The notes under the pieces were generated by a model. That model made no database searches. It saw nothing but the letters and a program-made list of their open reading frames with translations, and had not been told where the DNA came from. A stretch of 64,000 nt of DNA from the IMG/VR virus record IMGVR_UViG_3300008261_000001, positions 124,001 to 188,000 of that record, one strand, 5' to 3'. How positions within the stretch are numbered: position 1 is the first letter of the stretch; the number at the start of each line of letters is the position of its first letter. A program made the position numbers and the translations under genes. Shown piece after piece: positions 13,999 to 52,503 of this stretch.

Positions 13999-14898
13999 AT
14001 GATCGTTATCCTCAGCCCCAACGCCCAGCTCGCCTCACAAACCATCGACCTCCCCACCCCTCCCGTTGTGACCATCGAGGCGGAGTACGGCTCATATGTG
14101 GCTCAGGGTTCTATCTACACCGCCGCTCACCATCAGCCCGTGGGTTCTGAGTTCGCAGGTCGTCATATCGGTGGGTCACGCCCTGCCCCTTGCAACGACA
14201 GCAAGATTCCCGTTGTTGGGGATAACGATGTGGTTCTTATCAGCCACATTGACGCAGACACGCTTGGTGGGCTCATGAGGGCGAGTGGGCAGTACGCCCC
14301 TCTTTTCAACCTTGAGGGGTTTTGGGAGTTTGTGGAGTTTGTGGACACTCATGGTTGGCACAAGGCTGACCCCACACACCCGCATTTCACGCACCTCTCC
14401 GCTATCGGTGCATACCTTCAGTCTAATCGCCCCAATACGCCTCGTGACACGAACTCTGATGTGACGGAGTTCGTGGTGGGTGCAATGGAGTTTGTCTCTC
14501 GACTCCTTAAGGGAGGGCTTGAGGAGCTTCAAGTCGGTGTTAAGTTCGTTAAGGCTCAGGACGACTTGAACTTGTCCTCGTGGGTCACTACCACCCCCTT
14601 CAATGTCGTTGTCCGTAGGGCTACGACCTTCACCAATCACCTCTATCGTGACCCTAACGGCATGGTGGGTGTGGGCATCGTGGCTTACAATGACTCCCTC
14701 GGCTCTATCACTATTTCTCTCGCAGACCCTATCAAGGGGGTCTCTTGTCGTGAGGTGGTGCAGTCTCTTTGGGGTCAGCAAGCAGGTGGGCATGATGGCA
14801 TCGCTGGCAGTCCTCGTGGTCAGATTATGACCGAGTTGGACTTTAAGAACGCCATTAACGCCTTCTCACAGGCTGTAGCCTACGCTCTGAACGCTTAA
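13999..14898 (+). CDS. Putative DHH/DHHA1-like phosphoesterase
   Basis: TAAHH, ISHIDAD, FVDTHG, AGGHDGIAGSPRG; AAGGA RBS; fold call is inference. Confidence 0.5.
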   Translation: MIVILSPNAQLASQTIDLPTPPVVTIEAEYGSYVAQGSIYTAAHHQPVGSEFAGRHIGGSRPAPCNDSKIPVVGDNDVVLISHIDADTLGGLMRASGQYAPLFNLEGFWEFVEFVDTHGWHKADPTHPHFTHLSAIGAYLQSNRPNTPRDTNSDVTEFVVGAMEFVSRLLKGGLEELQVGVKFVKAQDDLNLSSWVTTTPFNVVVRRATTFTNHLYRDPNGMVGVGIVAYNDSLGSITISLADPIKGVSCREVVQSLWGQQAGGHDGIAGSPRGQIMTELDFKNAINAFSQAVAYALNA

Positions 14899-14950
14899 TC
14901 GTTTATGAAGGTTCGCCTTTTGGACTTAACTATCCAAAAGGCGAAGCACC

Positions 14951-15487
14951 ATGAGCGAAGAAGAAGTGAAGGTAGGGTCTTTAGAGGACAAGCTATCGGA
15001 TGAAGAACAACAACAAGAGGACAAAGTGTGGGAGGAGCTTGAGGAGCTTCTAGAGGGTGAGGGGGAGTACAACAAGGGGTTGATTTTGGTTATCCAAAAG
15101 GACGGAAACTTGTTGGCTTTATTGGATACGGAAGAGGAGTACACGGACGAGCAGATGGCTATGTTTGCTCGTGTGTATATGTTGAAAAATCCATCTTGGG
15201 TTTTATGGGTGGTTTTATTCATAGAGATTTGGTTTACGGAGGCGATGTTATTGTGGGAGGAAAAGAAGCCTGTCTTATTGGATAAGTGGAAGACTCTTAA
15301 AGACGAGGGTGTTCGTCTTATGGTTTTATTAGGGGCTTATTGGTCGTCTTTATGTGTATGGGCTAGGGTTGTATGGGCTAGGGTTGTAGCGGTAAAGGCT
15401 CGTCTGAGGCGTAGGGGATTGGATAAGAAGTGGGAGTGGGTAAAGAAGCAGTTGGGGAAGGTCGTGGGTAGTTTATTTGAAAAGTGA
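14951..15487 (+). CDS. Hypothetical membrane protein
   Basis: Acidic N-terminus, two hydrophobic stretches. Confidence 0.6.
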   Translation: MSEEEVKVGSLEDKLSDEEQQQEDKVWEELEELLEGEGEYNKGLILVIQKDGNLLALLDTEEEYTDEQMAMFARVYMLKNPSWVLWVVLFIEIWFTEAMLLWEEKKPVLLDKWKTLKDEGVRLMVLLGAYWSSLCVWARVVWARVVAVKARLRRRGLDKKWEWVKKQLGKVVGSLFEK

Positions 15488-15580
15488 GGGGGGAGCATTT
15501 GTATATAGGGGTGTATCGGGTGGGGTAAAAGTAGCCCTGCTCAATTCTTCAACCCCTTGTGAGGGAGTAAGGTTTTCGTT

Positions 15581-16045: not shown

Positions 16046-16074
16046 GCTTATCGGAGCGTCTAAGGGGTTAGGTT

Positions 16075-17385: not shown

Positions 17386-17524
17386 GGGGTTATCCTTTCA
17401 CAGAGGGGAGTGGTATTGACTACAACACCTAAGGACTCTCATTAAATAACTATGGAAGGATGTAGCTTTGAGTTTTATTAAGTGTTTATATTCAGAAGGG
17501 TGTTAGATTAAAAGGAGCTAACAT

Positions 17525-20498: not shown

Positions 20499-20509
20499 GG
20501 AGAAACGAT

Positions 20510-21909: not shown

Positions 21910-23766
21910 ATGAGTTTATCTTCAGTAGCAATAGCTGCCAGTGCTAAGGCAGGTAAACAATCTGAACACAATGCGGATATTATTGAGTTTGTCGAAGCCT
22001 CTTGGGGGCTGAAGATGACTCTTTTCCCTGTGCAGAAGGTTATCCTAAAAGCCCACTATGGGTTAGAGTTGGACGACACCAAGAAGTTTACGATTACCGA
22101 TTGGAGGAGACAGAACGCCCGTCATGTCACTGAAAAGGAGTACTTAAAAATCCTCTTTGAAGAGGGTAGATGCAACATAGGAGAGGTCATCCCTGGCAAA
22201 CAAAGGCGAGAGATGATTTTGTCCATAGGTCGTAGATCTGGTAAGACGACTATTTCCGCGTGTATAGCCGCTTACGAGACATACAAGCTCATTAAGAAGG
22301 GCGACCCTCAGAGATATTATGGGTTGCCCGCCTCTAACAATATACAGATTATTTCTGTGGCTACGGATAAAGACCAAGCTGGATTACTTTATCAAGAGGT
22401 GTCAGGACACTATCGCAACTGCTCGTTCTTTGGTCCATACACAGCGAATAACACCCTAAGCTACGCTCGTTTCCAAACACCTGCGGATGTGGACAAATAC
22501 GGAAGGTACTTGGACGATCCTTCTGCTAAAGCCACTCTGAAAGTGACTTTTAGGTCGTGTGTGGCGAAGGGTCTTCGTGGTGCAGGTAATATCTGTGTGA
22601 TACTCGACGAGGTGGCTCACTTTACGGATAAAGGTCAGTCAGGTGCAGAGGAGGTGTACAACGCGGTAGTACCTTCTACTTCTGCATATTCACCCAAAGA
22701 TCCCGTAAATCCCACTAAACCTATCGGTGAGGTGGAGGGTCGAGTTATCCTTATTTCTTCACCTTTAGGGAAGCAAGGGCTGTTTTACAATCTGTTTCAG
22801 ATAGGTATGCAAGGTGGTGCTGCTTCGGATAATATTCTAGCTGTGCAAGCTCCTACATGGGAGGTGAACCCTACGGTACCTGCGAGCGAGTTCGAAAAGC
22901 ATTACCTCAAAAATGCCACCGTGTTCTTTACAGAGTATGGAGGCGAGTTTACGGATAGAACTCGTGGTTGGTTGGAGTCGGCAGAAGACCTTTATGCGTG
23001 TGTAGATCCTAAACTAAAGCCCTCTACTTCCGCACCAGCTAGGAAACCCCACTACATGGGCATCGACTTGGGTTTGGTAGGGGACGCAAGTGCTATAGCT
23101 ATTGGACACCTAGAGGGTGATAAGATAGTGTTGGACTTGGTAGATCAGATTAAAGCAGGCGAGGGTAAGTACAAGGACAAGGAACGCTTGGACTTTGATG
23201 AGGTGGCGGATTGGATACATGGATGGAGTAAGAAGTTTTACATATCCGAGGCTATCTTCGACCAATGGGTGGGCATCCCTCTACAGCAAGCCCTAGAAAA
23301 GAGGGGTCTGAAACAGATGGTGTCGGTTAATATGACAAAGCAGTTAACCTCACAGATGTTCCAAAACTTTAAGGATATGATGTGGGACAGCAGACTGAAA
23401 CTCTACGACAAGCCAAACCCAGAAGTTAACGGTCATGAGCCTTATCTCTTAGAGTTGTTGGAGCTACAAGCGACTGTACACTCTAAGAACATAATCTCAG
23501 TCGAAGCACCCCAAGTAGCTGGCAAGCACGACGATATGTCGGATGCCCTTGTGCGTATGATATGGGTAGCTTCTAACCATATAGGCACACAGAAGCATTT
23601 CGCCATATCAGGCGGATCTTATAGACACCCCTTAGCGGCGGGTTCTAAGGTACTAGCCCAAGCGAGCTATGTGAGAGGTGGTAGCGATGAGAGGCGTATG
23701 GCACCTAAAGCACCTCGTCCAACATTGAGGGACGCTATCAATAAACGCTTTGGTGGCGGTGTTTAA
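21910..23766 (+). CDS. terL: Terminase large subunit
   Basis: GRRSGKT, VILDEVAHF, LISSPLG, YMGIDLG, HDDMSDA. Confidence 0.92.
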   Translation: MSLSSVAIAASAKAGKQSEHNADIIEFVEASWGLKMTLFPVQKVILKAHYGLELDDTKKFTITDWRRQNARHVTEKEYLKILFEEGRCNIGEVIPGKQRREMILSIGRRSGKTTISACIAAYETYKLIKKGDPQRYYGLPASNNIQIISVATDKDQAGLLYQEVSGHYRNCSFFGPYTANNTLSYARFQTPADVDKYGRYLDDPSAKATLKVTFRSCVAKGLRGAGNICVILDEVAHFTDKGQSGAEEVYNAVVPSTSAYSPKDPVNPTKPIGEVEGRVILISSPLGKQGLFYNLFQIGMQGGAASDNILAVQAPTWEVNPTVPASEFEKHYLKNATVFFTEYGGEFTDRTRGWLESAEDLYACVDPKLKPSTSAPARKPHYMGIDLGLVGDASAIAIGHLEGDKIVLDLVDQIKAGEGKYKDKERLDFDEVADWIHGWSKKFYISEAIFDQWVGIPLQQALEKRGLKQMVSVNMTKQLTSQMFQNFKDMMWDSRLKLYDKPNPEVNGHEPYLLELLELQATVHSKNIISVEAPQVAGKHDDMSDALVRMIWVASNHIGTQKHFAISGGSYRHPLAAGSKVLAQASYVRGGSDERRMAPKAPRPTLRDAINKRFGGGV

Positions 23767-23819
23767 CGCTTTATACTCCCTCGTATTAACTATCCAATAT
23801 CTGATGGGAGTATAAAGCA

Positions 23820-24071: not shown

Positions 24072-25740
24072 TGAGATGGGTAAGCCTGTAGCCGAGATTA
24101 AACAGAAATCTAAGGTGAGCACGAGGAAGTTGTCTCCAACGGAGATGAAGTCCCGTGTTAAGGTCGCTATGACCACAGGCGGTTCGATGATGGGTAGCGG
24201 TGGAAACTTCTACTCACCTGAACTATCCACAGATTTCTTAGAGCTACCCCAAAGCCAAGACGAGCAAAGGAACTACTTTAGGTTCTTTTATCGCACGGAT
24301 CCCTTTGTGGGGCAAGCGGTGGACTTACACACAGAGTTGCCGTTATCCAAAATCCGCTTGGGGTTGCCCAAAGCTAAAAATAGGGATATGGCTTATGAGG
24401 CGTTGCGGTTTTGTGAGAAGTGGTCGAAGCGTGTGGGTTTGCTTCATAGGCTCATAGAGATACTGCACGAGTACAACCTTTTGGGTGAGGTGTTTGTTTT
24501 CTGTGAAGACAATAACCCCGATATGCCCAAGACGGTCACACACAAGAAGATCAATAAGCTCACTCGTGAAGGGGAAGCGATTGAGGATTGGGAGGAGTAC
24601 GAGGACTCTCTAGATAGAGCTTACAAGTGGCTTAAAAAGAACTATAAGGGTTGGACAAGCCTAAAGGTATTGCCACCCGAACAAGTACATATGGAGACTT
24701 TTCCATTTACATCCGAAAAGATCGTGGAACTGATTCCAGACTCCAAGACAAAGGCGGTGGTGGAGCGAGCTTCCATGCAAGACCCCTCTGCAATGAGGGT
24801 CGTAGAGTCAATGCCTTCTGATGTAGTGGAGGCACTAAGGGAGGGTCGCAACATCCCCTTAAACACAGATCCAGATGCTGGTAGCTTTGTGTACTTCATG
24901 GCTCGTAAGAAGTCTCAGTATGAGCCAAGAGGTCACTCTATCCTAGAACGCTGTCTGCGTATCCTTATTTACAGGGATAAGCTGAGGCAAGCCCAGACCT
25001 CGATAGCGTCTAGACACATGACACCCATACGCCTTGTCTATGCGGAAGACATGGACGCGGCTGATGTCGAGGCGTTGCGTGACCAAGTGGACTTAGCTCT
25101 GCAAGACCCAGATTACTCGATCATTGCTAACTTCCAAGTGTCTTGGGAGGAGATGGGTGCTGATTCGCGTCTATTGGACTTGAGCGGTGAGTACGATATG
25201 ACGGATAGACAAATGTACGCGGGCTTAGGCGTGACTGAGTCTCTGTTGTCGGGCGAGTCTAGCTACTCAGGCGATAGGATAAACCTAGAGGTCATTAACA
25301 CACGCTATATGCTCATGCGTGAAGTGCTTCAAGAGATGGTGGAGGAAAATATCCTAAAGCCCATGTGTAAGCGTATGGGCTTCATAGAGGAAGACGAGGA
25401 CGGAGAAGAGGTAGTCGTTCACCCAACCTTGAGCTTTACTCGCTTAGGGTTGAGGGATAACCAAGACACCTTTGACGCTCTCTTTAATCTCTATCAGAAG
25501 GGTTCTTTGGACATCGACATCATCTTGGAGTTGTTGAACATAGACCCACAGACGACCAAAGCGAAGCTAGAGAGGGATATGTTCACGCTGAACGACTCTC
25601 AGTTCAACGAGGTGTTGAGGGGCATTTATGGAGATGCAGGGTCTAAGCTGGCTGAAAACTCTGACGCGATAGAGCGTATCGCTAGAAATCTAGGTTTGAA
25701 GTACACACCTCCAGCGGATGAAGATGGCGGTCGGTTCTAA
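24055..25740 (+). CDS. Portal protein
   Basis: 561 aa after terL; FYRTDPFVGQAVDLHTELPLSK, RGHSILERC, GLGV..SLLSGESSYS. Confidence 0.8.
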   Translation: MIDDNDEMGKPVAEIKQKSKVSTRKLSPTEMKSRVKVAMTTGGSMMGSGGNFYSPELSTDFLELPQSQDEQRNYFRFFYRTDPFVGQAVDLHTELPLSKIRLGLPKAKNRDMAYEALRFCEKWSKRVGLLHRLIEILHEYNLLGEVFVFCEDNNPDMPKTVTHKKINKLTREGEAIEDWEEYEDSLDRAYKWLKKNYKGWTSLKVLPPEQVHMETFPFTSEKIVELIPDSKTKAVVERASMQDPSAMRVVESMPSDVVEALREGRNIPLNTDPDAGSFVYFMARKKSQYEPRGHSILERCLRILIYRDKLRQAQTSIASRHMTPIRLVYAEDMDAADVEALRDQVDLALQDPDYSIIANFQVSWEEMGADSRLLDLSGEYDMTDRQMYAGLGVTESLLSGESSYSGDRINLEVINTRYMLMREVLQEMVEENILKPMCKRMGFIEEDEDGEEVVVHPTLSFTRLGLRDNQDTFDALFNLYQKGSLDIDIILELLNIDPQTTKAKLERDMFTLNDSQFNEVLRGIYGDAGSKLAENSDAIERIARNLGLKYTPPADEDGGRF

Positions 25741-25902
25741 TAGATTATTTATACTCCAAGATAGCGGATAGGTTAACCCTTAACCCAACCCCTGTCTTGG
25801 AGTAATCAAGATGAGAACAGCATCGGAAGTATTAAGAAGCCTTGAGGCTCGTATCGCTCGTTTAGAGGGTCGCACAGCTTCTTCAAAGAGAAGTGCAAGC
25901 CT
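25725..25902 (+). repeat. Direct repeat copy 1 (portal 3' end + promoter + UTR hairpin + leader codons)
   Basis: Near-identical to 26380-26557. Confidence 0.92.
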
Positions 25903-26293: not shown

Positions 26294-26379
26294 GCCTTAG
26301 TGCTAAGTTTATTAGTGGTTTTGACTCAATAAACCCTTTATGAACCAACACCCCTAGATTTATCGCCCATAATGAACCC

Positions 26380-26557
26380 TGGCGGTCGGTTCTAATAGAT
26401 TATTTATACTCCAAGATAGCGGATAGGTTAACCCTTAACCCAACCCCTGTCTTGGAGTAATCAAGATGAGAACAGCATCAGAAGTCTTAAGAAGCCTTGA
26501 AGCTCGTATTGCCCGTTTAGAGGGTCGCACAGCTTCTTCAAAGAGAAGTGCAAGCCT
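26380..26557 (+). repeat. Direct repeat copy 2
   Basis: Near-identical to 25725-25902. Confidence 0.92.
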
Positions 26558-26963: not shown

Positions 26964-27035
26964 ATAGCCAATCAATAAACCCTTTATGAACCAACACCCC
27001 TAGATATAACTATCCAATATCTAGGGGTGTTGTTT

Positions 27036-27647
27036 ATGAGTCAGCACGAAAAGGATATGGGCTTATTGCCCATAATGAACCCTTTGTTCAACCTGCGTGA
27101 GATATGTAAGCAGATGGTGTTGCTAGAAGACCATCTGAACAATCCGCGTAAGCGTTGTCCCGACTGCATCTCAAAGCACTTCATCACAATAGAGGCTTTC
27201 TTTGAGGAAGCTATCTCATTGGATAAGGATTTGAAGTACAGCAAGCTCCTAGACGGCAAGGCTCAGATAATGAGGGACTTGCAGGGGTTGTGGTTGAAAT
27301 TCAAGGATACGGATAAAGAGGACAGGGGTTATGCCTTAGTAGCTCAGTTCTTGAGGCGACTGCGTAAGGACATACTGCCCATGTCGTTTGATGTAAGGAA
27401 GATGGCGTGTTTATCCGTTTCTTGTCCTCATCGGAAGCGTGTTGCTACCTTGACCCAAACGGAAAAAGAGGAGCGTGAGGTGGAGTCTCTAATCAAGACC
27501 TCGCCTAAGAAGAAGCCCCCTCGTAAGGATAAGATGAGGCGTAGGGTGGATGTTGAGGATAAAGATTTGGGTGGGAATAAGACCGACCCAGACCTCAAGA
27601 AAGCCTCTCTTATTCAGCGTGTGGTTGATCGCTATTTATCCCATTAA
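27036..27647 (+). CDS. Hypothetical protein with Cys/His cluster and basic tail
   Basis: LREICKQMVLLEDHL..RCPDCISKH; AATA-N5-TTTAT upstream. Confidence 0.7.
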   Translation: MSQHEKDMGLLPIMNPLFNLREICKQMVLLEDHLNNPRKRCPDCISKHFITIEAFFEEAISLDKDLKYSKLLDGKAQIMRDLQGLWLKFKDTDKEDRGYALVAQFLRRLRKDILPMSFDVRKMACLSVSCPHRKRVATLTQTEKEEREVESLIKTSPKKKPPRKDKMRRRVDVEDKDLGGNKTDPDLKKASLIQRVVDRYLSH

Positions 27648-27665: not shown

Positions 27666-30600
27666 ATGAATGTCTTTTCCTTATTGCGTGAAATAGAGGC
27701 TGTGGGCGAAAGGATTGAATCGCTCTCTAGGAGGGTGGGTTTAAATGTTCGCACAAGTGCTAAAAAGAAAAAGGATACCCCTCTCTCTGAACAAGCGAAA
27801 TCGAACTTAAAAGACAACACCTACAAGGATGTAGACACAAAAAAGGACATATCCTTTGGGACTGCTTTAAAGAAAGAGCACCCAAAGGCGGTCAAGGACT
27901 ACAAAAAGGAGTTGTCCAAAATAAAGGGAACGAAGAAGCCCCTAAAGAACTCAGAGTACAGATCGGGTGGTCAGTTTTCAGCCGATGTAAGAGTAGACCT
28001 TGAGGGGGCGTTCTCAAACGCGAGTGTAAGGGTGGATATTGAGAGCTTATCAATACCACAAGAAATGGGTATGAGAGCCGTTATAAGTGTTGTGGTTAAT
28101 GTGGCGACCGATATAGACGATGGCTATGAGTATGAGGAAAAGGAAAAAGGTGCTAGGAAACCTAAACAAAAGGGTTTGGATAAACAAAAGGGTTTGGATA
28201 AACAACAAGTCTTACCCAAAGACAAAAAGGCTCGTGTCAAAAAGATAAAAGATAAACTCGACGAGGTTTTACCCACACAGATAGATCTCCCCAACGGAGA
28301 AACCCTACCCGTTAATACGGAGGCTTTATCCAATATGACTACTGAGCGTCTAGAGGAGACACAAAAGACTCTAGACGCTCGTGCTGAGGAAAGGCAAGAA
28401 ACAGACTCCGAGTCTAAGGCTGATGAGAAGTCTTTATCCGAGCAGATAGAAAAGAAGATTTATTCGTCTAAGCTAAAGACAAGGGAAGAGCCAAGTGAGC
28501 TAGAGTCCGCGTTGAATCGGACAATAGATAAAATGTTCGAGGACGACGAGGGGTTTTTGAGTTCGGAGAAGGTACGGACTCAAAAGAGCGAGCTAAAGGG
28601 TCTTACGAGGTCGATTCAGTCGATGTCGCTCGAAGAGGCTGAGGAGGTGGCTAAGGCGTATGAGAAGCAAGGGGAGAGCCTCATAAACTCTTTTACGGGC
28701 AAAGACAGCGACTATGAGGGATTGAGTGAGCTTTACAAAGCCACACAAGAGGTTTTAAAAGCTGGGATACCTCAGAACCCTTTAGAGGATGAGGATATAG
28801 AGCATAAGCTCTTGGCGGAAGCCTCATTGGAAAAGTTATCCAAAGTCTCCAAACTCGATCAGCTAGAGACACTTAATGAAAAGCTAAAGGATAAGTCCCT
28901 TTCCAAAGAGGAAGCAAAAACCATTAAAGAGGAGATATCCAATATTGAGAAGGGAGCTAAAGCGTTATTGGAGGCAGAGGGCATTGATCCTTCAGCATAT
29001 AAAGCCTTCGTAGCGTACAGAAAGAATCCAGAAAAAGGGTTCAAAGATTTCGCCTCTGCTTTGGAAAAGTCCAAGTGGATGTCGGATAACTTAGAAGATA
29101 TACAAGGCGAGGTAGATCAAAAGAAGTCGGCTATAACCAAGCCCTACAGAGAGCAAGTTGGTAAGTATCTGGCGGCAAAAGCGATGGAGGAGGGATTTAT
29201 TCGAGATCCCATGTACGGAGTAAAGAGTATTGGAAAGACCGATATGAACGACTCTGATGTGGTAGCTCATCGCAGGCAGGTTAGGATAAACCAAGCTAGG
29301 CGATATAAGCAGATGAGTTCTGAAATACGCGATCTAGCCGTCCTAGAAACACAAGACTTATCCAATGACAACGCAAAGCTGATTGCAGAACTCGAAGAGA
29401 AACAATCTAAGGGTGAGGATGTATCCCAAGCCTTACAACAAGCGAGGGAGAAGCAGAATCAATATCAAGACACTCTTGCGGGCTTAAATACAGCAAGGCT
29501 TTTATTGGGTGAAAAGCCTATAGATGGTTTTCAAGAGGTCGATGAGAACCTCTTGAACTTAGCCAAGAGCGTAGACGACAATAATCTTTTAGAGGCGGTC
29601 TCCGTTTTAGGTTCACCCACAGGTGGGGGTAAAGACAGAGAACAAACACGGGAGGCTGTTAAGGGTGCCTTATCCGAAATGTCCTTAGATCGTTTTGGGC
29701 AGATCGTGGGAGATCAGTACGAGGATATGCTCGATGTCCTTAAACCCACTTACTGCCCATCTACACCAAAAAACGAAGCGGCAGGTTTAGCGGATAAACA
29801 TCTTACGGAGGGGCAGAAGTGTCCAGAGCCTTTAGACCCACGACTACATGACCTTATGCGTAGGTACATCACTGACTCGTATGCAGACACACAAAGCATA
29901 CGGAGTGAAGATAGGGGTGGTTTCGATGAAGGTAGATCGAAACAAGTATCCACTCAACAGCGTAAGGAGTTCAAAGAGCTTTGGGATAAAAGCAAAGAGG
30001 AAGTCCTAAAAGCCATAACCATGAGCGAGGACGACCCCGCATATGATGAAGACGCTGTGGTGAGTACCCTAGAGCTATTTGGGTTGGAACTGAGGATGAG
30101 GAACTATGAAACGCTGATGGTGGACGGCAAGAAGATAGTCGGTCATGAAGCCATCATGAAGTACATCCGCAAGGTTCAAGAAATGGATAAGAAGGAGCGA
30201 GAGAAAAAGGTAAAGGAGTTGGCGAAGCAGTTTGAAGATTTCTTAAAGCAGAATGAACCTGAGGCTTCTGAAACACCCCCTCGTACAGCAAATATATTTA
30301 ATAAATCTTTTATAGACCCACGCTTAAATATCGCAGGAGACTTTCTTATGAAGAAAAGTGCGACAACCTATGTGGACTATCAAGCTCTAGCCTCAACATT
30401 TGAGGTTGGGATGAGTGTATTTACGCATAGTGGTGGCGATCCTGCTCGATCAGGTGTTGTGGTTGCCGTATTTCCAGCTATTGGAATGGTCGATGTACAG
30501 TTTCCACACGGAAGCACTCGTCTCCCAGTAGAGGATCTTGTCATTGACCATACTAAAGAAATAGCACCACTACCGGATAGTTTGATATCCGTACCTGGCG

Positions 30601-33757: not shown

Positions 33758-33903
33758 TAGTTTCCAATAGGGTGTAATAGTTCTTTTATACCCTAACGCA
33801 TAATACACAAACCTAACTTGGGGCGGTTCATGGTGAACCACCTCTTAAATACAACACACTACTTCCTTGAAAACAGGGAGTACGAGAACATAGGAAAATA
33901 ACT

Positions 33904-35524: not shown

Positions 35525-35592
35525 AATAGGTTATTTATACTCCGAGATAGGGGATAGGTTTTAACCCTTAACCCAACCCCTATCACGGAGTA
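35525..35592 (+). promoter_or_regulatory. AATA-N5-TTTAT promoter-like motif plus RBS-occluding hairpin (third copy of cassette UTR)
   Basis: Homologous to 25739-25804; TACTCCGAGATAGGGG pairs with CCCCTATCACGGAGTA. Confidence 0.75.
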
Positions 35593-43632: not shown

Positions 43633-43672
43633 ACTTCTTGCTCCTAGCGATTGGTGGGTTGTGCCCCTCCCC

Positions 43673-43748
43673 TAATGAGAGTGGACTCCGCTTTGGGATA
43701 AAAAATCTTTTTACTCGTTTTTATCCCAACCCTTAGTGACCCTTATTA
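43673..43748. promoter_or_regulatory. Second divergent pair of TATCCCAA-N12/13-YTYATTA motifs
   Basis: 43673-43700 (-) and 43722-43748 (+). Confidence 0.75.
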
Positions 43749-43800
43749 GGAGGGCAGAGAGAGAAACACACCCTAGAGCCTACAGAAAGGGCTTAGAGAC

Positions 43801-44397: not shown

Positions 44398-44475
44398 CCC
44401 CAAAGGGTAGGGTAGGTTTGTGGGAGTTAATATCTTTTTTATGATTGGATAACCCTAAATAAAGGAGTTATCCAA

Positions 44476-45146: not shown

Positions 45147-45300
45147 GTCACGCCTTGTGGGACAGCTAGAGCGTAATGAGACACAAGCCCAACAGATTTT
45201 ATCCGAAGCTCGTAAGAAAGCTGGTGTGACTGACGATATGCCGTGGCAGATTCAAGAGGATGGGAAGATCTTAGCTATTCTGCCCAAGAGTGAGAGTTAA
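45019..45300 (+). CDS. Small coiled-coil protein
   Basis: AGGAG RBS; Q/L heptads. Confidence 0.7.
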   Translation: MSETNQAPQQVGQLTEEELQAIAQLRNQATQLLGLLGQLEIRKSRLVGQLERNETQAQQILSEARKKAGVTDDMPWQIQEDGKILAILPKSES

Positions 45301-45349
45301 ATAATCCATTTATGAGACAACCCTTTAGTACACAGCTAAAGGGGGTTGT

Positions 45350-46744: not shown

Positions 46745-46747
46745 AAT

Positions 46748-47272
46748 ATGGACGAGCGAGATCCTAGAAAGAAGTTCAACCTTAAAAAGTACAAGGTGGG
46801 TCGGACGACTTTTAAGTCTCCTGTACTAAGGAACACTAAGATTACGAAGCGTATGTTAGAAATCTTAGGTGAAGAGATGGTGAGGGGTGTCCGAGAGGAG
46901 GCATCTAGGGCATCAGGTTTGGGTACGGGTATTCCAAGCACGACTGAGTTTTTGGAAAGTTTTGGTTATGAGATAGTGAGTGGGGACTCAATAAGGATAA
47001 CTTCGGATTGGAAATGGGTCTCTGCGTACTTAAAGGCGAGGGCTCCTTTTAAGATGACTTGGCTTACTCAGCAGAAGGGAGCACCTAAGGTGATACCTTT
47101 AAGGGATAAGAACGGTGACATAGTGTTTAGGACAACGCCTCTGAGGTTGGCTGATGCGTGGGTTCACCCTGCCATTTACAAGTATAACTTCATAGATAAG
47201 GGTATTAAGCGTGGATTGACAAGGGCTACCACAAGGATACTTTTCGAACTCGGTTCGGATGTATTTAGGTGA
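46748..47272 (+). CDS. Probable neck/tail-completion protein
   Basis: Basic; WLTQ..VIPL..VFRT..WVHPAI..FIDKGI. Confidence 0.5.
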   Translation: MDERDPRKKFNLKKYKVGRTTFKSPVLRNTKITKRMLEILGEEMVRGVREEASRASGLGTGIPSTTEFLESFGYEIVSGDSIRITSDWKWVSAYLKARAPFKMTWLTQQKGAPKVIPLRDKNGDIVFRTTPLRLADAWVHPAIYKYNFIDKGIKRGLTRATTRILFELGSDVFR

Positions 47273-47324
47273 TTTGGTTTCGAGAATCCCATAAGGGGTT
47301 TGTACCTATCGAAAGGATGAACTC

Positions 47325-47612
47325 ATGAGTTGGCACTACGAGATGATTTTAGTTAAGAAAGCGGTTGAAGACTACGAGGAGGACGAGGGTCGTCTTGTGG
47401 AGATTTACCTAGAGGACGATGGATCTGTGTTGGGTTTTGCTTTTGCACACCTTGTGACGATTGGGGACTTGGAGCTTGCACATCAAGATGTGTTGAAACA
47501 AGGTGGGAAGCTCAACACATGGTTTTACGACAGAGGTAAGTTTTCATGGGAGAATGGAAAGTTGGTGTATGAGCCGAACGAGGATGGGATAGTGGTAATC
47601 AAGAGAACTTGA
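47325..47612 (+). CDS. Hypothetical protein
   Basis: AAGGA RBS. Confidence 0.65.
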   Translation: MSWHYEMILVKKAVEDYEEDEGRLVEIYLEDDGSVLGFAFAHLVTIGDLELAHQDVLKQGGKLNTWFYDRGKFSWENGKLVYEPNEDGIVVIKRT

Positions 47613-47711
47613 TAATCATCAATGCCCTTTAAACAATCACCTTGACTTATTTTAGACTGCTCCCTAGCGTATGGGTTATCCGTTAACTCAGAGGTGCTAA
47701 GGATGTAGCAG

Positions 47712-47960
47712 ATGAGAGATGAAGTAAAGATAGGTGAGATTGTGGATATTGTTTTACGCCCCGCCTCCCAAGAGCATGGGGCAACAATCGAAGAACACGA
47801 CGAGTGGCTTGACGGTGGCGAGGATTGGAAAGATTTCTCATTAGTTCACCAAGAGGTGAACTCAGTGAACATAATCGACTTGAAGGGTAAGGCGTTCAAG
47901 TTTACGGGTACTTATTTACTGAGCCTTGTGGGGGATAGCGTTTACCTTCGGGCTAAATAG
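47712..47960 (+). CDS. Hypothetical protein
   Basis: AAGGA RBS. Confidence 0.6.
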   Translation: MRDEVKIGEIVDIVLRPASQEHGATIEEHDEWLDGGEDWKDFSLVHQEVNSVNIIDLKGKAFKFTGTYLLSLVGDSVYLRAK

Positions 47961-48005
47961 TTCATTTATACCCATGAAGGGGTCAGGCACCCATTCATGG
48001 AGTAA

Positions 48006-48566
48006 ATGGATATGAGAACTGCAGGTGAAGTATTAAGAAGCCTAGAGTACAGAATAGCTCGTTTAGAGCGTCAGTCTGCTCGTGTTCGCCCACCAGCTCC
48101 ACAGCGTACTCCATCCACTAGGGGTCGTATGAAAGATCTGTCTGTACACTCAGACCTTCTAACTGCTTTGCAGTTGATCTATCATTACTCTGAAGCTGAC
48201 AGATTGGCTTTCACAAGTGAGTTGTCGAGTTATAAGGGTGTTTTTGAGGTTGGTGGGTGGCCAGGAACTCATTACGACTCAGCCACTAATAGTATTGTTT
48301 TCTACCTTACCCTAGAGGGCAATCCTAACACAATTCACCGTTTGGCTGATAAATATGGCATAAATATCATAGATGTTTCCATAAAGTTAGACGGACAGAA
48401 GAACGATAAGACCGTCTATGAGTTGGGTTTGAGCTTAGACTCGGCTAAATACAAGGGTGTTTGGAAGGAGTTTATGGGCAACGCTTCTATGCAGAACACC
48501 CTTCGTGAGCTTCCTGAAGCTGTAAGACGCTCGGAGCGTTTGTTCTTTGGTATCGACTTTAAGTAA
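48006..48566 (+). CDS. MRTAGEVL-leader cargo protein
   Basis: MDMRTAGEVLRSLEYRIARLERQSA leader; AATA-N5-TTTAT at 47956. Confidence 0.85.
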   Translation: MDMRTAGEVLRSLEYRIARLERQSARVRPPAPQRTPSTRGRMKDLSVHSDLLTALQLIYHYSEADRLAFTSELSSYKGVFEVGGWPGTHYDSATNSIVFYLTLEGNPNTIHRLADKYGINIIDVSIKLDGQKNDKTVYELGLSLDSAKYKGVWKEFMGNASMQNTLRELPEAVRRSERLFFGIDFK

Positions 48567-48625
48567 TCTGTTTTCCATTATCCTTTTATGAGTCTCTATC
48601 CTTAAGCTAATAAGGGGAGCGACTC

Positions 48626-50179
48626 ATGAGACACAAGAGATTTGCAGACTTCTATAGGGAGGTATCCCCTCCTGACTCGTTGTCTAGTTTATCCAATGGT
48701 TCAGCCGAAAAGGGTACTAACCCTGATGGCACAGCAAACCATAGTGCGTTGCCTAATGGGGATAGCTCTAGGAACATAGGTCGCCCAAGTCCTGACTCAC
48801 CCAACCTCAAGTATCGGAACTTGGATAGATCTGAGTCGTATGGGAGAACTCCAGCTAACAAGCTCGACACAGGGTATGTGCATGACAGCGGTAGTGGTTC
48901 AGCTAGGGTAATCCCTTATGACTCTGGGTTTTCCAATAACTCCTCATCTACTCGTGTTGGTAAGGCTAAGAATGTACCTGTAGATGAAAAGCTATGGGCG
49001 GAGATACAGGCTCTTGCTAAGGGTGAGTCGGATAAACCCGTCACAAGGGGAGATGAGACTGCTAACCCTGTTAATGACGGAAAGGGCTTCACGACTTTTC
49101 CGTCTGCATATGCAAATGGTTGGGCGTTGGCTCAGTATAAGCGTCTTGGGGGAAAATGGAAAAAAGAGGGTTCTGAGTACGAGATGCCTCGTAAGTGGGA
49201 CAAGGAGCATTGTGAGTCTAAGACTTGTGATGAGATGGGGTTTTCAGAAAAGGCATCGTGCAGACCCTACAAGGATTGCTACAGCAAGTCAGCAAGCCGA
49301 GTAGCGGAAAGGTACTCAGCCAAGAGGGACGACTCGAAGATGAAGAACACGGGTAAGGGTGGGTTGAGTACTTGGTTTGCGGGGCATGGTGGAGGAGATC
49401 CTGATGAGAGGGCTACATGGGGAGATTGGATAGCGGTCACCCCTGTGAAGCACACCGTCACGAAAGAGGATGGAGAGAAGAAGACCTATGAACCTGGAGA
49501 CATTGTTGGCCCATGTGCCGTATCTAGTGAGCCAGAGTGGGCGGATGTCACAAGTGGAGGAAAGAAGCCTCTCAAGTGTATGCCTAGAGAAAAAGCATGG
49601 GATATGCCCAAAGAAGACAGAGCGGAGCTTGCCAAAAAGAAGCGTAGGGAGGAGGCGAAGCATCGTGGGCAGAAACCTGTTAACACTCCGACTTTTAGTG
49701 AGGAAGCTAAAGAGGTCACTAAGAAGAAGGCTGTAGTTCAGTCTATGGCTCGTAGGGTGGCGTATTTGTACTTACAAGGTGCTTCTCAGCCAGCACAAGA
49801 TTTAGCTGGTGTTAAGACATGGGTAGAGAAGACACGGCAAGACCAAGTAGAGAGCGACACAAACCCCGAGAAGTCTAGAGAGGACTACGAGGACGGAAAG
49901 CCACAGCGAGATAGGGTGTTGCCTTTACCGAGTGGGCATCCTGAGGGCAGAGACGAACATAGGGTAGGACCACCTGTTTACAACACACCTTCAGATAGCT
50001 CAGGTGCTTCTACCTCTTATGGAAAACAGCCCAATCCAAACGCCATACCGAATCAGCCTGATGGGAAGCCCTTACATGAGCGTCCTCGTTCGAGTGGGTT
50101 GCCTGGAGATCAGTACGGTCATCCATACATAAACCAACAGAACAGCACAGGTATGAAGAGGCGGACAGATGACATCTGA
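48626..50179 (+). CDS. Modular hydrophilic protein, probable processed head polyprotein
   Basis: Modules FPSAYANGW..YKRLGGKW, CESKTCDEMGFSEKASC, GLSTWF..GPC..KCMP separated by KSA/RVA/KKA. Confidence 0.65.
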   Translation: MRHKRFADFYREVSPPDSLSSLSNGSAEKGTNPDGTANHSALPNGDSSRNIGRPSPDSPNLKYRNLDRSESYGRTPANKLDTGYVHDSGSGSARVIPYDSGFSNNSSSTRVGKAKNVPVDEKLWAEIQALAKGESDKPVTRGDETANPVNDGKGFTTFPSAYANGWALAQYKRLGGKWKKEGSEYEMPRKWDKEHCESKTCDEMGFSEKASCRPYKDCYSKSASRVAERYSAKRDDSKMKNTGKGGLSTWFAGHGGGDPDERATWGDWIAVTPVKHTVTKEDGEKKTYEPGDIVGPCAVSSEPEWADVTSGGKKPLKCMPREKAWDMPKEDRAELAKKKRREEAKHRGQKPVNTPTFSEEAKEVTKKKAVVQSMARRVAYLYLQGASQPAQDLAGVKTWVEKTRQDQVESDTNPEKSREDYEDGKPQRDRVLPLPSGHPEGRDEHRVGPPVYNTPSDSSGASTSYGKQPNPNAIPNQPDGKPLHERPRSSGLPGDQYGHPYINQQNSTGMKRRTDDI

Positions 50180-51296
50180 CAGCCTTGTACTAATGGATAG
50201 TTCAGAGGGTTGGTGGGATATAGACTCTGAAGGTTTATTGGTGCGTGTTGGTTCTGATGTGGTGCATTTGGGTGAGATAAGAGTTCTTCCACCTCGTAGG
50301 AGACAGCGTACACAAAAGGGGCAGGTTAAGAGGGATTACTTGGTGCGTAGGCGTAAGAACCGCAAGAACAAGTACAAGGTAAAGCTGAGGCGTAAGCGTT
50401 ATTACAGGCGTAATAAGAGGCGTATCCTCAGATACCAAAAGCAGTACAGAGAGAACCCCCATTTGTTTAAGAGGCTTGAGGGTGGTGGGGTGTCTACAAG
50501 AAAACAAAAGAACGACCGAGACGACAGAAAGAAGAGAGCTATGTTGGACTTGCACCTAGATGCTATCCGAAGTGTAATGGATAAACGCTATAGGGTTGCA
50601 GAAGAGCTTGAGGGGGATTTTGAACTAGAGGGGGCTCTAGCTCGTGCTCCTCGTGGTCCAATGAAGCGTATGAAGCAAAAGACTCGTGCGTTAAGGCGTA
50701 GACCCGACAATCAAAGGCGTAGGTTATTACGGAAAGTCTATCGGAAACGACTGAGGTCGGATGCGAGATTTAGGAAATACCGTAAGGACTATGCTAAGAA
50801 GTACTACAAGAAGAACAAAAGTAAAATCAGACAACGCAGAAAGAGAGGAACAGAAATGATGAATAAACTATCCGTAATGCAGGCATTGTTGGCAATCCTA
50901 AGAGCGGCACATTGGTCGCATTGGACTTCTCATTGGCAAGTAAAGGGTACAGCCTCTTATGGCGACCATTTATTGATGGAGAAGCTCTATGCGGGCTTGG
51001 TGGACGAGATAGACACCCTTGCAGAAAAGATCATAGGCGAGTTCGGTTCTGACGCACTTGACGCAGTAGACCAAGCACAGCTTATGACTTCGAACTTAAT
51101 CACGCAGAGTCAAGGTGAGAAATCGCCCTTGAAGCGAGCGTTGCATATCGAAGAGAACCTTCAGAAGACGCTGAAGGTGTTTTACGATATGTTAAAACAG
51201 CACGGGATGTTATCGTTGGGTTTGGACGATTATGTAATGAGCCTTGCGAACGCCCATGAGACGAACCTTTATCTACTGAGGCAGAGGCACAGATAA
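50169..51296 (+). CDS. Arg/Lys-rich (protamine-like) region fused to a Dps/ferritin-like domain
   Basis: Two long R/K/Y tracts; HWTSHWQVKG..YGDHLLMEKLY..IDTLAEK in the C-terminal ~145 aa. Confidence 0.75.
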   Translation: MTSDSLVLMDSSEGWWDIDSEGLLVRVGSDVVHLGEIRVLPPRRRQRTQKGQVKRDYLVRRRKNRKNKYKVKLRRKRYYRRNKRRILRYQKQYRENPHLFKRLEGGGVSTRKQKNDRDDRKKRAMLDLHLDAIRSVMDKRYRVAEELEGDFELEGALARAPRGPMKRMKQKTRALRRRPDNQRRRLLRKVYRKRLRSDARFRKYRKDYAKKYYKKNKSKIRQRRKRGTEMMNKLSVMQALLAILRAAHWSHWTSHWQVKGTASYGDHLLMEKLYAGLVDEIDTLAEKIIGEFGSDALDAVDQAQLMTSNLITQSQGEKSPLKRALHIEENLQKTLKVFYDMLKQHGMLSLGLDDYVMSLANAHETNLYLLRQRHR

Positions 51297-52415
51297 ATGT
51301 TCCACCATTTGACGCTTGCCGTGAGGGATAGGATAATCAAGGAGTTTAGGGAGTATTGGGCGGATCACCCTAGATATCCTGATTTGGCTCAGAACATACA
51401 AGGTAAGTATTCGTTTGATGAGCGTCCTCAGTTTGGCATGGTGGTCAAAACGGGTGGTGCAAGCAATGTGGTTTTATCCAATGATAACTACATGGGCATA
51501 ATAGAGGGCTATGTGTCATTGGCACAGGTTCCTCCGTACAAGGGTAAATCCATCGAGTGGGTTCGGGACGATATGATGAAGACTCCAGAAGAGGGGGTGT
51601 ACATCATATCCATTATTGAGCCGACTGTAGAGGTGGAAGACCCCTACATAAAGTATGCGGTTATCCAAAAGTACAGACGGGTTCATGAAACCTCTTTGAT
51701 TTTTAGCTCGCCTACGGAGATTTCCTTATTGGGTGAGCCGATAGAAAACTCGTTGAGGTTGATAGAGTATCCGTCAGGTAGGTTATTGAGTTCGTCCGAG
51801 TACACCTTAGATGGTTCTACGGTGACTTTAACGGAGGCGTTGCCCTCATCTAAGTTGAGGTTAGAGGCGAGGTACACCGAGCAAGACGCACAGACAGGTC
51901 CTTATGCGGTACAGCCAGCGTTGGCTTACAGAAATCTAATCAATGGTGTGGTGGTGGCTTTTGGTCGTGAGCTAGAGGCTGGGGATAAGATGGCAGTTTT
52001 GGTGGAGGGTACGAGGACACAAGTAAGCAAGGAATATGGTGGGCGGTGGGACATAAGCGTAGATGTAGATTTGGTAACGAGGGATGTCCACTCACAGGCG
52101 GACATAGCGGATAAGACGGTGGTGTGGCTGTGGTCTATTTTAAGACCGAAGTTATCCACTATGGGTCTGGAGTTATCGAATGTGTCGTTAGGGGGAGAGG
52201 GAGAGGAGGCGTATGACGACAATGGGGATGATTATTTCTACACAGCGTCTATATCTTTCACGATCCAAGCCGATTGGTTTATCCATTATCCGTTAGTTAT
52301 TCCGATCTTGTCGGTGTCTACAAACAATGTGGTGCCGATGGAGTTGATGCCTATGGGTCAACCGATAGTGGGTGTTGGAAACTCGGACAGCTTTAGACAG
52401 CGGATTATTGGATAG
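51297..52415 (+). CDS. Probable tail terminator/sheath stabiliser
   Basis: Just upstream of sheath; beta-rich; FYTASISFTIQADW. Confidence 0.5.
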   Translation: MFHHLTLAVRDRIIKEFREYWADHPRYPDLAQNIQGKYSFDERPQFGMVVKTGGASNVVLSNDNYMGIIEGYVSLAQVPPYKGKSIEWVRDDMMKTPEEGVYIISIIEPTVEVEDPYIKYAVIQKYRRVHETSLIFSSPTEISLLGEPIENSLRLIEYPSGRLLSSSEYTLDGSTVTLTEALPSSKLRLEARYTEQDAQTGPYAVQPALAYRNLINGVVVAFGRELEAGDKMAVLVEGTRTQVSKEYGGRWDISVDVDLVTRDVHSQADIADKTVVWLWSILRPKLSTMGLELSNVSLGGEGEEAYDDNGDDYFYTASISFTIQADWFIHYPLVIPILSVSTNNVVPMELMPMGQPIVGVGNSDSFRQRIIG

Positions 52416-52503
52416 TGCATAATGGATAAAAGAGGTGGGGTGGTTCAATAATCTATCTATGATAGATAGCTATATAAACGCATAGCTTTTACATGGAGTA
52501 TAG

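What the first reader, a model, noticed from the sequence alone, without database searches (positions are those of the whole stretch)
14898..52503. AATA-N5-TTTAT motif systematically followed by an RBS-occluding hairpin
Exact motif at 25739, 26328, 26394, 26974, 30300, 33776, 35525, 44429, 45300, 47956; variants near 14902, 17485, 23761, 48576, 52447 and on the minus strand near 1300, 59090, 60540. In many the bases at or just after TTTAT pair with the Shine-Dalgarno region: TACTCCAAGATAG/CTGTCTTGGAGTA (25811), with a compensatory A-T to G-C change at 35593; GCTTTATACTCCC/GGGAGTATAAAGC (23820); CAACACCCCTAGATAT/ATATCTAGGGGTGTTG (27036); TTCGCCTTTTGGA/TCCAAAAGGCGAA (14951); TTGGATAAC/GTTATCCAA (44476). 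Known: T4 e, soc, 49 and I-TevI are silenced this way on early read-through RNA. Inference: late initiation inside the 5' arm frees the RBS, and here this is applied to many genes.
Basis: partly seen in the sequence, partly recalled or inferred. Interest (0 to 1): 0.62.

Follow-up and report, generated by a model that had tools for sequence, protein, structure and literature searches.

The report
Phage promoter motif with RBS-masking hairpins
In an uncultivated 290-kb lake phage, a 14-base promoter-like signal sits before dozens of genes and, where an upstream gene is read in the same direction, is followed by a hairpin that hides the ribosome-binding site; this looks like a trick known from a few phage T4 genes, used genome-wide.

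Summary
AATA-N5-TTTAT occurs 10 times in the window (0.5 expected). It occurs 23 times in the 290-kb phage genome and 29 times in a 297-kb relative, against 1 in each control. It is always on the gene's strand, 28-74 nt before an SD+ATG, and only the N5 spacing is enriched.

New result: strong RBS masking needs both the motif and a co-directional upstream gene. The median cost to open SD..AUG on read-through RNA is 11-13 kcal/mol there. It is 5-8 at motif sites with a divergent neighbour, and 6-8 at co-directional genes without the motif. This replicated in both genomes.

Orthologous sites keep motif and hairpin while the leader sequence is completely replaced.

If RNA starts about 6-7 nt after TTTAT, the masking falls to background. 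If it starts right after TTTAT, the masking persists.

The phage encodes an ECF-like sigma factor. A second, early-type promoter motif also exists.

Best reading: a middle/late promoter whose -10-to-start segment encodes the anti-SD arm, as in T4 e, soc and I-TevI, applied to most co-directional late genes. No transcription start is measured, so the mechanism remains an inference (about 0.5).

The parts
14893..14906 (+). weak motif variant (TTTAT at 14902-14906; poor AATA half)
   Evidence: sequence; PWM below 11
14904..14953 (+). hairpin; core stem 14912-14924 / 14933-14945; outer pairs reach the ATG at 14951
   Evidence: -23.9 kcal/mol, z -7.15
23761..23774 (+). motif variant (TTTAT at 23770-23774) before the 83-aa gene that heads the portal gene
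23768..23818 (+). hairpin that includes TTTAT itself and the SD; ATG at 23820
   Evidence: -22.9 kcal/mol, z -7.14
25739..25752 (+). exact motif; AATA overlaps the portal gene's stop codon
25752..25804 (+). SD-masking hairpin; anti-SD at motif positions +15..+18; ATG at 25811
   Evidence: z -6.0
26328..26341 (+). exact motif; partial copy of the 26974 promoter plus the start of its 5' arm; no gene of its own
26394..26407 (+). exact motif (duplicate of the 25739 unit)
26407..26459 (+). SD-masking hairpin; ATG at 26466
26974..26987 (+). exact motif
26985..27038 (+). hairpin covering SD and ATG (27036); anti-SD at +23..+26
   Evidence: -28.3 kcal/mol, z -8.1
30300..30313 (+). exact motif inside ORF 27666-30854; followed by SD and an in-frame ATG at 30348; no hairpin
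   Evidence: z +1.0; the orthologous site in G001 is conserved
33776..33789 (+). exact motif followed by a 115-nt structured leader (33790-33903) that does not mask the SD; ATG at 33904
   Evidence: z -3.4; leader sequence conserved in G001 and G004
35525..35538 (+). exact motif
35538..35592 (+). SD-masking hairpin with the AU to GC compensatory pair; ATG at 35593
   Evidence: z -6.7
43673..43711 (+). copy of the second, early-type bipartite motif (TAATGAG-N12-TTGGGATAA); reads through gene 43801-44397 towards the 44429 site
44429..44442 (+). exact motif
44445..44475 (+). hairpin covering the SD-ATG spacer and part of the SD; ATG at 44476
   Evidence: -14.5 kcal/mol, z -4.8
45300..45313 (+). 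exact motif before the 464-aa gene
45317..45349 (+). SD-masking hairpin; anti-SD at +21..+25; ATG at 45350
   Evidence: z -2.9; orthologues in G001 and G002 have different hairpins
47956..47969 (+). exact motif
47969..48004 (+). SD-masking hairpin; ATG at 48006 or 48012
   Evidence: z -2.7
48576..48589 (+). motif variant (CATT-N5-TTTAT, PWM 13.3)
48587..48628 (+). hairpin from the AT of TTTAT to the ATG (48626); masks SD and start codon
   Evidence: -17.2 kcal/mol, z -4.5
52447..52460 (+). motif variant (AATA-N5-TCTAT, PWM 16.2)
52456..52497 (+). hairpin pairing the motif's 3' half with the SD region; ATG at 52504
   Evidence: z -2.5
1302..1315 (-). motif variant (TATA-N5-TTTAT, PWM 16.5) before a 1123-aa helicase gene that starts at 1255 and runs off the window
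1264..1298 (-). hairpin whose 3' arm carries part of the SD
   Evidence: -23.6 kcal/mol, z -6.1
60540..60553 (-). weak variant (PWM 13.0) with a divergent upstream gene; no hairpin; ATG at 60497
   Evidence: z -0.4
17476..17489 (+). weak variant with a divergent upstream gene; no significant hairpin; ATG at 17525
   Evidence: z -1.5

Best explanation
The 14-mer YT-AATA-R-N4-TTTAT-R is a phage-specific middle/late promoter element. It is read on double-stranded DNA, probably by host RNA polymerase carrying a phage factor; an ECF-like sigma is encoded at G000:270787-271410.

Where the upstream gene runs in the same direction and no terminator intervenes, RNA polymerase reads in from upstream. 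On that long RNA, the stretch from TTTAT to about 15 nt beyond it pairs with the SD of the next gene, and often with its AUG. The gene is then translationally silent.

RNA started at the gene's own promoter begins inside or past that 5' arm, an inferred 6-12 nt after TTTAT. It cannot form the mask and keeps at most an inner stem-loop just 5' of a free RBS.

Shown: the motif, its orientation and spacing, its conservation in relatives, the hairpins, and their dependence on motif x co-directional context.

Inferred: that the motif is a promoter, where transcription starts, that read-through RNA exists, and that translation is affected.
For: - Motif enrichment, strand and distance rule.
- Only N5 spacing is enriched. 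The two blocks lie about one helical turn apart, which suggests recognition on duplex DNA.
- Divergent gene pairs share overlapping back-to-back motifs in 73-91-nt intergenic regions, which leaves no room for another promoter.
- Motif genes lie in the terminase-portal-protease-sheath region and among ORFans. DNA polymerase, ribonucleotide reductase, DnaB and the RecD-like helicase lack the motif.
- Sigma70-consensus promoters are depleted in the motif region: 7 found against 22.7 expected.
- The phage sigma matches sigma-H in PDB (profile E 9e-8) and folds like ECF sigmas.
- Leader dG, co-directional against divergent: -20.3 vs -9.6 in G000 and -16.3 vs -10.1 in G001, pooled p 6e-6. The difference survives removal of paralogous leaders (p 0.003 and 0.0015).
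- 2x2 comparison of RBS-opening cost. Motif with co-directional neighbour: 11.2 and 13.1. Co-directional without motif: 6.8 and 7.8. No motif with divergent neighbour: 5.9 and 6.3. Pooled p 3.6e-6.
- With a start at +20 the co-directional/divergent difference disappears (4.9 vs 4.7; 6.6 vs 5.9). With a start at +14 it persists (10.5 vs 5.0; 9.9 vs 7.0).
- Orthologous sites in G000, G001 and G002 keep motif and hairpin with non-alignable leader sequences. The divergent pair 6308/6347 lacks hairpins in both phages.
- Within one homologous leader family, the only member in a divergent context (g278531) has lost 4 of 12 outer pairs.
[quoted passage not shown] Phage-sigma single-element promoters start 6-9 bp downstream of the element (PMC8948821).
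Against: - No transcription start is known.
- A purine follows TTTAT in 78% of sites, which could itself be the start. The layout TAATA...TAT-R also loosely recalls T7-type promoters, which start right after the TATA.
- In G001 the anti-SD lies mostly at +21..+27. A start at +20 leaves a weak 5'-terminal SD hairpin there, and only a third to a half of SDs are at least 50% open even at +24..+27.
- An ECF-type sigma normally reads a -35/-10 pair 16-17 bp apart, not two blocks 5 bp apart. The sigma may instead belong to another promoter class.
- Many upstream genes carry the same motif, so the T4 rationale of early versus late does not apply directly.
- About 27% of co-directional sites have only weak hairpins. 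About a third of divergent ones have some hairpin.
- Gene calls came from my own crude ORF caller.
Confidence: 0.5

Rival explanations
1. Transcription starts at the purine right after TTTAT, or inside TTTAT, as in T7-type or AR9-type promoters. Every own-promoter mRNA would then carry the whole hairpin at its 5' end. The RBS would have to be freed afterwards, either by cleavage in the stem (RNase III or E, as at T7 promoter-plus-RNase III sites) or by a phage factor or helicase. The hairpin might also stabilise the 5' end.
For: - A purine is at +14 in 78% of sites, and A at +15 in 45%.
- Stems very often begin at A12/T13 of the motif and end at the ATG, so the leader is essentially one hairpin.
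- In G001 the anti-SD lies at +21..+27.
- The T7 arrangement of a promoter followed by an RNase III hairpin is from my own knowledge of T7; I did not check it in a paper here.
Against: - It predicts a hairpin at every motif site. Divergent motif sites in G000 sit at background (5.3 against 11.2).
- Genes at co-directional sites would be about 5 kcal/mol harder to translate than those at divergent sites, for no reason.
- No T7-like or multisubunit RNA polymerase was found, although the T7 model had no positive control.
- Many stems are only 9-13 bp, short for RNase III.
Confidence: 0.2
2. The hairpins mainly serve the upstream gene, as 3'-end protectors or processing sites of its mRNA. They overlap the next gene's SD only because intergenic space is tight.
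For: - They occur where there is a co-directional upstream gene.
- The motif often overlaps the upstream stop codon, so the hairpin starts about 12 nt after it.
Against: - Co-directional intergenic regions of the same length without the motif have no excess structure at the RBS (6.8 and 7.8 against 11.2 and 13.1).
- The SD is inside the stem far too regularly.
- There are no U-tracts.
- Hairpin strength does not depend on distance to the upstream stop (p 0.74).
Confidence: 0.08
3. The motif works in RNA, as the binding site of a phage translational activator. The protein would sit just 5' of, or on the base of, the stem and melt it, as Com does on Mu mom mRNA.
For: - The motif abuts or enters the stem base. 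UUUAU is often paired with the bases before the AUG.
- The distance rule to the ATG also fits a leader element.
Against: - The motif is present without a hairpin at divergent sites.
- Overlapping back-to-back motifs in 73-91-nt divergent intergenic regions leave no room for separate promoters upstream of each.
- No other conserved element lies upstream of the motif.
- The blocks are spaced one helical turn apart.
Confidence: 0.05
4. Translational coupling. The ribosome finishing the upstream gene, whose stop often overlaps AATA, unwinds the stem and so licenses the next gene.
For: The upstream stop codon overlaps or abuts the motif at 39 of 61 co-directional sites (gap of 12 nt or less).
Against: - Hairpin strength is the same whether the stop is within 12 nt or further away (-17.0 vs -16.8, p 0.74).
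- A ribosome at a stop at positions -1..+1 reaches only to about +10, short of the anti-SD at +15..+27. This rests on ribosome footprint geometry from my own knowledge.
- It does not explain the need for the motif.
Confidence: 0.04

Closest known systems
T4 late genes masked on early or middle read-through RNA (e, soc, 49, I-TevI/II/III, segB; mobE of Aeh1)
   Same: A hairpin sequesters the RBS on long transcripts. A short phage-specific promoter lies in the DNA that encodes the 5' strand of that hairpin. No terminator lies between the genes (PMC3014915, PMC2988022).
   Different: - The promoter sequence is different (AATA-N5-TTTAT against TATAAATA).
- The likely factor is an ECF-like sigma, not gp55.
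- The device appears at about 20-25 sites per genome rather than a handful of genes.
- It is used between genes that seem to belong to the same class.
- Transcription starts and translation effects are not measured here.
Single-element promoters of phage-encoded sigma factors (phiEco32 gp36: tAATGTAtA, start 6-8 bp downstream)
   Same: A short conserved element without a -35 partner lies upstream of middle/late genes in a phage that encodes its own sigma (PMC8948821).
   Different: The sequence here is bipartite, with a strict 5-bp gap. The sigma here appears to have a region-4-like domain. No link between this sigma and this motif has been tested.
T7 promoter followed by an RNase III processing hairpin
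   Same: The order gene end - promoter - hairpin - RBS is repeated along a long co-directional gene array.
   Different: - No T7-like polymerase was found (weak test).
- The stems here contain the SD and are often too short for RNase III.
- The hairpins are absent at divergent sites.
Mu Com-mom translational activation
   Same: A hairpin masks the SD and AUG, with a specific sequence at its 5' flank.
   Different: The motif here also occurs without any hairpin, and in overlapping divergent pairs. That fits a DNA signal better.

Membership tests
T4-type promoter-inside-hairpin translational masking | The RBS is paired in a stable hairpin on RNA that enters from upstream | tested here: met
   Predicted folds have z -2.5 to -8. 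The opening cost is 11-13 kcal/mol against 6.3-6.4 for ordinary genes. This is prediction only; no structure probing was done.
T4-type promoter-inside-hairpin translational masking | The local promoter's start lies inside or past the 5' arm, so its RNA cannot form the mask | not testable with these tools
   No RNA data exist. In silico, a start at +20 abolishes the excess masking and a start at +14 does not. In G001 the anti-SD at +21..+27 needs a start at +24 or later for full release.
T4-type promoter-inside-hairpin translational masking | Upstream transcription reads into the gene, with no terminator between | tested here: inconclusive
   No terminator-like sites lie at or before the motifs. 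The stop codon often overlaps the motif. An early-type promoter at 43673(+) points at the 44429 site. The transcripts themselves have not been seen.
T4-type promoter-inside-hairpin translational masking | The mask separates temporal classes: an early or middle transcript against a late promoter | tested here: inconclusive
   Timing is unknown. Many upstream genes carry the same motif, so here the mask may separate transcripts of one class.
Phage-sigma-dependent promoter | A conserved element lies at a fixed range upstream of genes, on the gene's strand, in related phages | tested here: met
   It is absent from the more distant LR745208.1.
Phage-sigma-dependent promoter | The phage encodes a sigma-family protein | tested here: met
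   A 207-aa protein matches phrog_1740 (E 3e-6), PDB sigma-H (profile E 9e-8) and ECF sigma folds with probability about 1. Pfam Sigma70_r2 scores below its cut-off.
Phage-sigma-dependent promoter | That sigma directs initiation at this element | not testable with these tools
   This needs in vitro transcription. The 5-bp gap does not fit the usual ECF -35/-10 geometry.
T7-type promoter plus RNase III site | A single-subunit RNA polymerase gene is present | tested here: inconclusive
   PF00940 found nothing, but the control genomes also gave nothing. PHROGs and Pfam found no polymerase among the large ORFs that were scanned.
Intrinsic terminator | A GC-rich stem is followed by a U-tract | tested here: not met
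   The motif-linked stems are not in the terminator-like lists except 45321, which has a weak tail. Overall counts are near the shuffle level.
Com-mom-type RNA operator | The motif works only together with the masked hairpin and lies inside the transcript | tested here: not met
   The motif occurs without a hairpin at divergent sites, and as overlapping back-to-back pairs.

The most novel reading that the evidence does not exclude
Own-promoter mRNAs also carry the full mask, because transcription starts at the purine after TTTAT. Most late genes of this phage clade would then be made as translationally locked messages. They would be opened together by a dedicated phage factor or by a processing step, giving a genome-wide translational licensing switch for late genes.
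Probability: 0.15. Interest if true: 0.8.

Novelty: new variant of a known kind. Interest (0 to 1): 0.6.

Why it matters
If the starts lie where inferred, this clade of uncultivated freshwater jumbo phages uses promoter-gated translation as its general rule for late gene arrays. A gene would be translated only from RNA made at its own promoter, and RNA that reads in from upstream would stay silent.

That would let a phage without terminators set each protein's dose by promoter strength. It could also expose untranslated read-through RNA to Rho or to decay. Both points are my inference.

In T4 the device is known only for a few special genes.

The result also gives a promoter model (about 50 sites per genome) and a candidate sigma for a phage group that has no cultured member. 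The motif x context test can be reused on other genomes.

Tried and rejected
- RNA evidence. The one search for runs returned three small lake metatranscriptomes that hold next to none of the stretch. Laying them on 43500-49400 gave nothing.
- Near relatives. Megablast and tblastn against GenBank phages found no near relative. Only TerL gave a hit, to LR745208.1, which has just one exact motif.
- RNA polymerase genes. Rpb2, Rpb1 and T7-polymerase Pfam models found nothing in the genome.
- Sigma structure. The single-sequence model of the sigma-like protein was useless (pLDDT 35). The model built from an alignment worked.
- Rfam. No family covers the hairpins; only tRNAs were found.
- Pairing of TTTAT as evidence that the motif is transcribed. 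I dropped this test. A12 pairs about as often at divergent sites (10/26) as at co-directional ones (29/62), so it looks compositional or an end effect of folding.
- A start-site signal downstream of the motif. Only a faint A-rich patch at +28..+30 turned up.
- Terminators upstream of the co-directional sites with weak hairpins, which might have explained those exceptions. None were found.
- Translational coupling. Rejected because hairpin strength is independent of the gap to the upstream stop.
- Chance or composition. Rejected by the shuffles, by the reversed-sequence controls and by the spacing scan.

Full report
**What the window is**

The window is bases 124001-188000 of a 290,179-bp IMG/VR virus record (93% complete) from lake water. 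It carries a large terminase (21910-23766), a portal (24055-25740), a prohead protease (30859-32244) and a 1605-aa protein with a sheath C-terminal domain. It also has six tRNAs.

No close relative is in GenBank phages. The best is LR745208.1, with TerL 64% identical. IMG/VR holds relatives:
- G001, 296,642 bp, 66% identity in the 464-aa protein.
- G002, 110 kb, about 72% nucleotide identity.
- G004, 17 kb.

I fetched G001, G002 and G004 whole.

**The motif**

- AATA-N5-TTTAT occurs 10 times in the window against 0.51 expected. It occurs 23 times in the genome against 1 in the reversed control. G001 has 29 against 1, G002 has 9 and G004 has 4. LR745208.1 has only 1.
- Only the 5-base gap is enriched.
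- The consensus is YT-AATA-R-W-Y-Y-N-TTTAT-R, with nothing conserved 25 nt upstream or 30 nt downstream.
- A weight matrix finds 48 sites in G000 and 60 in G001 at a threshold where the reversed controls give 10 and 4.
- Sites lie on the gene's strand, and the last T lies 28-74 nt (median about 41) before an SD+ATG.
- Divergent gene pairs share overlapping back-to-back copies in intergenic regions of 73-91 nt.
- Motif genes lie in the structural region and among ORFans; one is a tail protein and one a helicase. DNA polymerase, ribonucleotide reductase, DnaB and the RecD-like helicase lack the motif.
- Sigma70-consensus matches are depleted in the motif-rich region.

I read the motif as a phage-specific middle/late promoter element.

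**A candidate factor**

G000:270787-271410 encodes a 207-aa protein with these matches:
- phrog_1740, 'sigma factor', E 3e-6.
- Pfam Sigma70_r2, below its cut-off.
- PDB sigma-H, by profile, E 9e-8.
- ECF sigmas (SigH, SigE, SigW, AlgU), by an AlphaFold model with pLDDT 79.

It has 46 homologues, several of them on contigs of 139-360 kb. Whether it reads this motif is untested. The 5-bp gap does not fit the usual ECF geometry.

**A second promoter class**

G000 has about 22 good copies of ccccTAAT(A/G)AG-N11-12-cTTGGGATAAt. The search gave 35 hits against 5 in the control. The second half looks like an extended -10 element. The copies cluster at 40-60 kb among small genes on alternating strands.

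In the window they lie at 4448+, 4544-, 13953-, 40691+, 41165+, 42293-, 43673+ and 43748-. They look like early promoters. The copy at 43673(+) reads through gene 43801-44397 straight into the 44429 motif and its hairpin.

**The hairpins**

Their z-scores run from -2.5 to -8.1. The exceptions are:
- 30300, which lies inside an ORF (z +1.0).
- 17485 and 60553(-), which both have a divergent upstream gene (z -1.5 and -0.4).
- 33776, which has a long structured leader that does not mask the SD.

Stems typically begin at A12/T13 of the motif and end at or in the ATG, so the leader is essentially one hairpin. None matches an Rfam family. None is terminator-like apart from a weak call at 45321.

**The key test**

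I classed every site by whether the nearest upstream gene is co-directional or divergent.

Leader dG:

| Genome | Co-directional | Divergent |
|---|---|---|
| G000 | -20.3 (n 30) | -9.6 (n 9) |
| G001 | -16.3 (n 36) | -10.1 (n 19) |

The pooled p is 6e-6. Leader dG is -12 kcal/mol or stronger at 48/66 co-directional sites against 9/28 divergent ones (Fisher 4e-4). After removing five paralogous leaders the p values are 0.003 and 0.0015.

The median cost of making SD..AUG single-stranded on read-through RNA is 11.0 against 5.2 kcal/mol in G000 and 13.4 against 7.8 in G001. Ordinary genes cost 6.3-6.4.

A 2x2 comparison, limited to intergenic lengths of 35-160 nt, shows that the excess needs both factors:

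| Class | G000 | G001 |
|---|---|---|
| Motif, co-directional | 11.2 | 13.1 |
| No motif, co-directional | 6.8 | 7.8 |
| Motif, divergent | 5.3 | 10.1 |
| No motif, divergent | 5.9 | 6.3 |

For motif against no motif within co-directional sites, p is 0.0016, 0.0006 and 3.6e-6 pooled. Several 'no motif' outliers are degenerate motif copies (22022, 119035, 147820 and 209063).

Hairpin strength does not depend on the distance to the upstream stop codon (p 0.74).

**Where transcription would have to start**

If the RNA begins at motif position +14, the co-directional excess persists (10.5 against 5.0; 9.9 against 7.0). If it begins at +20, the excess is gone (4.9 against 4.7; 6.6 against 5.9). Most of the masking energy therefore comes from bases +14..+19. 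For a -10-like element, that is the segment between the element and the expected start. Phage-sigma single-element promoters start 6-9 bp downstream of the element (PMC8948821).

In G000 the bases paired to the SD lie mostly at +15..+20. In G001 they lie mostly at +21..+27. There a start at +20 removes the outer stem and the AUG pairing but leaves a weak terminal SD stem.

**Evolution**

Orthologous genes in G000, G001 and G002 keep the motif at the same place and keep a hairpin, while the leader sequences cannot be aligned. Examples are 78779/258415, 104854/198737, 223747/5458 and 279004/182451. The divergent pair 6308/6347 lacks hairpins in both phages.

The 464-aa gene has a different SD-masking hairpin in each of three lineages. 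In two of them it lacks a canonical motif.

In a family of seven homologous leaders, one pair covaries (3 AU: 3 GC) and several positions change to wobble pairs. The member in a divergent context has lost 4 of 12 outer pairs.

**Interpretation**

The data fit the T4 e/soc/I-TevI design: the late promoter lies in the DNA that encodes the 5' strand of an RBS-masking structure, and the long RNA is silent (PMC3014915, PMC2988022). Here the design is applied to most co-directional motif sites, about 20-25 per genome.

It differs from T4 in several ways:
- The promoter sequence and the likely factor are different.
- The upstream genes often carry the same motif, so the mask would separate transcripts of one class rather than early from late.
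- Nothing has been measured.

**Rivals**

- A start at the purine right after TTTAT, with later processing or activation, remains open. It does not explain why divergent motif sites in G000 lack hairpins.
- A pure 3'-end role for the upstream mRNA is contradicted by the no-motif co-directional class.
- An RNA operator is contradicted by motif sites without hairpins and by overlapping divergent pairs.
- Translational coupling is contradicted by the independence from the gap to the upstream stop.

**Limits**

- Gene calls came from a simple ORF caller of my own.
- Fold energies are predictions.
- Paralogous leaders inflate the G000 counts unless removed.
- The number of divergent sites is small (9 and 19).
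- No public RNA data for this phage were found.

Noticed in passing
window 4448(+), 4544(-), 13953(-), 40691(+), 41165(+), 42293(-), 43673(+), 43748(-); many more at G000 24-60 kb: A second bipartite motif, ccccTAAT(A/G)AG-N11-12-cTTGGGATAAt. The search gave 35 hits against 5 in the control, of which about 22 are good copies. It looks like an extended -10 promoter, probably the early class. It is present in G000 but not recognisably in G001.
   Followed up: partly
window 25811, 26466, 36297, 48012; G000 21576, 22028, 45074(-), 120787(-), 121822(-), 159881, 212872(-), 214384, 219745(-), 224901(-), 229684(-), 278452(-): At least 16 genes begin with, or contain near the N-terminus, the same 20-aa peptide (MRTASEVLRSLEARIARLE-like) ahead of unrelated bodies. 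This resembles a capsid-targeting or propeptide signal. G001 has only one weak match.
   Followed up: partly
window 25739-26293 and 26394-26963; 26328-26345: A tandem duplication of promoter + hairpin + gene. Between the copies sits a fragment that copies the 26974 promoter and the first bases of its 5' arm.
   Followed up: partly
window 30300-30350 inside ORF 27666-30854: An exact motif, an SD and an in-frame ATG at 30348 would give a nested 168-aa C-terminal protein just upstream of the prohead protease. In G001 the orthologue is a separate 170-aa ORF with the same motif.
   Followed up: partly
window 33790-33903: An unusually long (115-nt) leader with two stable stem-loops. Its 3' part is nearly identical in G001 and G004, although other leaders have turned over. 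It may be a separate regulatory RNA element before the 201-aa gene.
   Followed up: no
G000:270787-271410 (outside the window): A 207-aa ECF-like sigma factor, conserved in G002 and in 46 metagenomic homologues, several on contigs of 139-360 kb.
   Followed up: yes
window 59147-62881: A cluster of six tRNA genes: Glu, Arg, Tyr, Gly and Val on the + strand, and Asn on the - strand.
   Followed up: no
window 52940-57757: A 1605-aa ORF whose last 90 residues match the phage tail sheath C-terminal domain, making it an exceptionally long sheath-like protein. It is preceded by a 143-aa zinc-ribbon protein that has its own motif and hairpin.
   Followed up: no
G000 about 40159-40260 (outside the window): A short tandem repeat (units containing GTGATATTGGATAACTAACTC) that turned up as a false hit of the second motif.
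   Followed up: no
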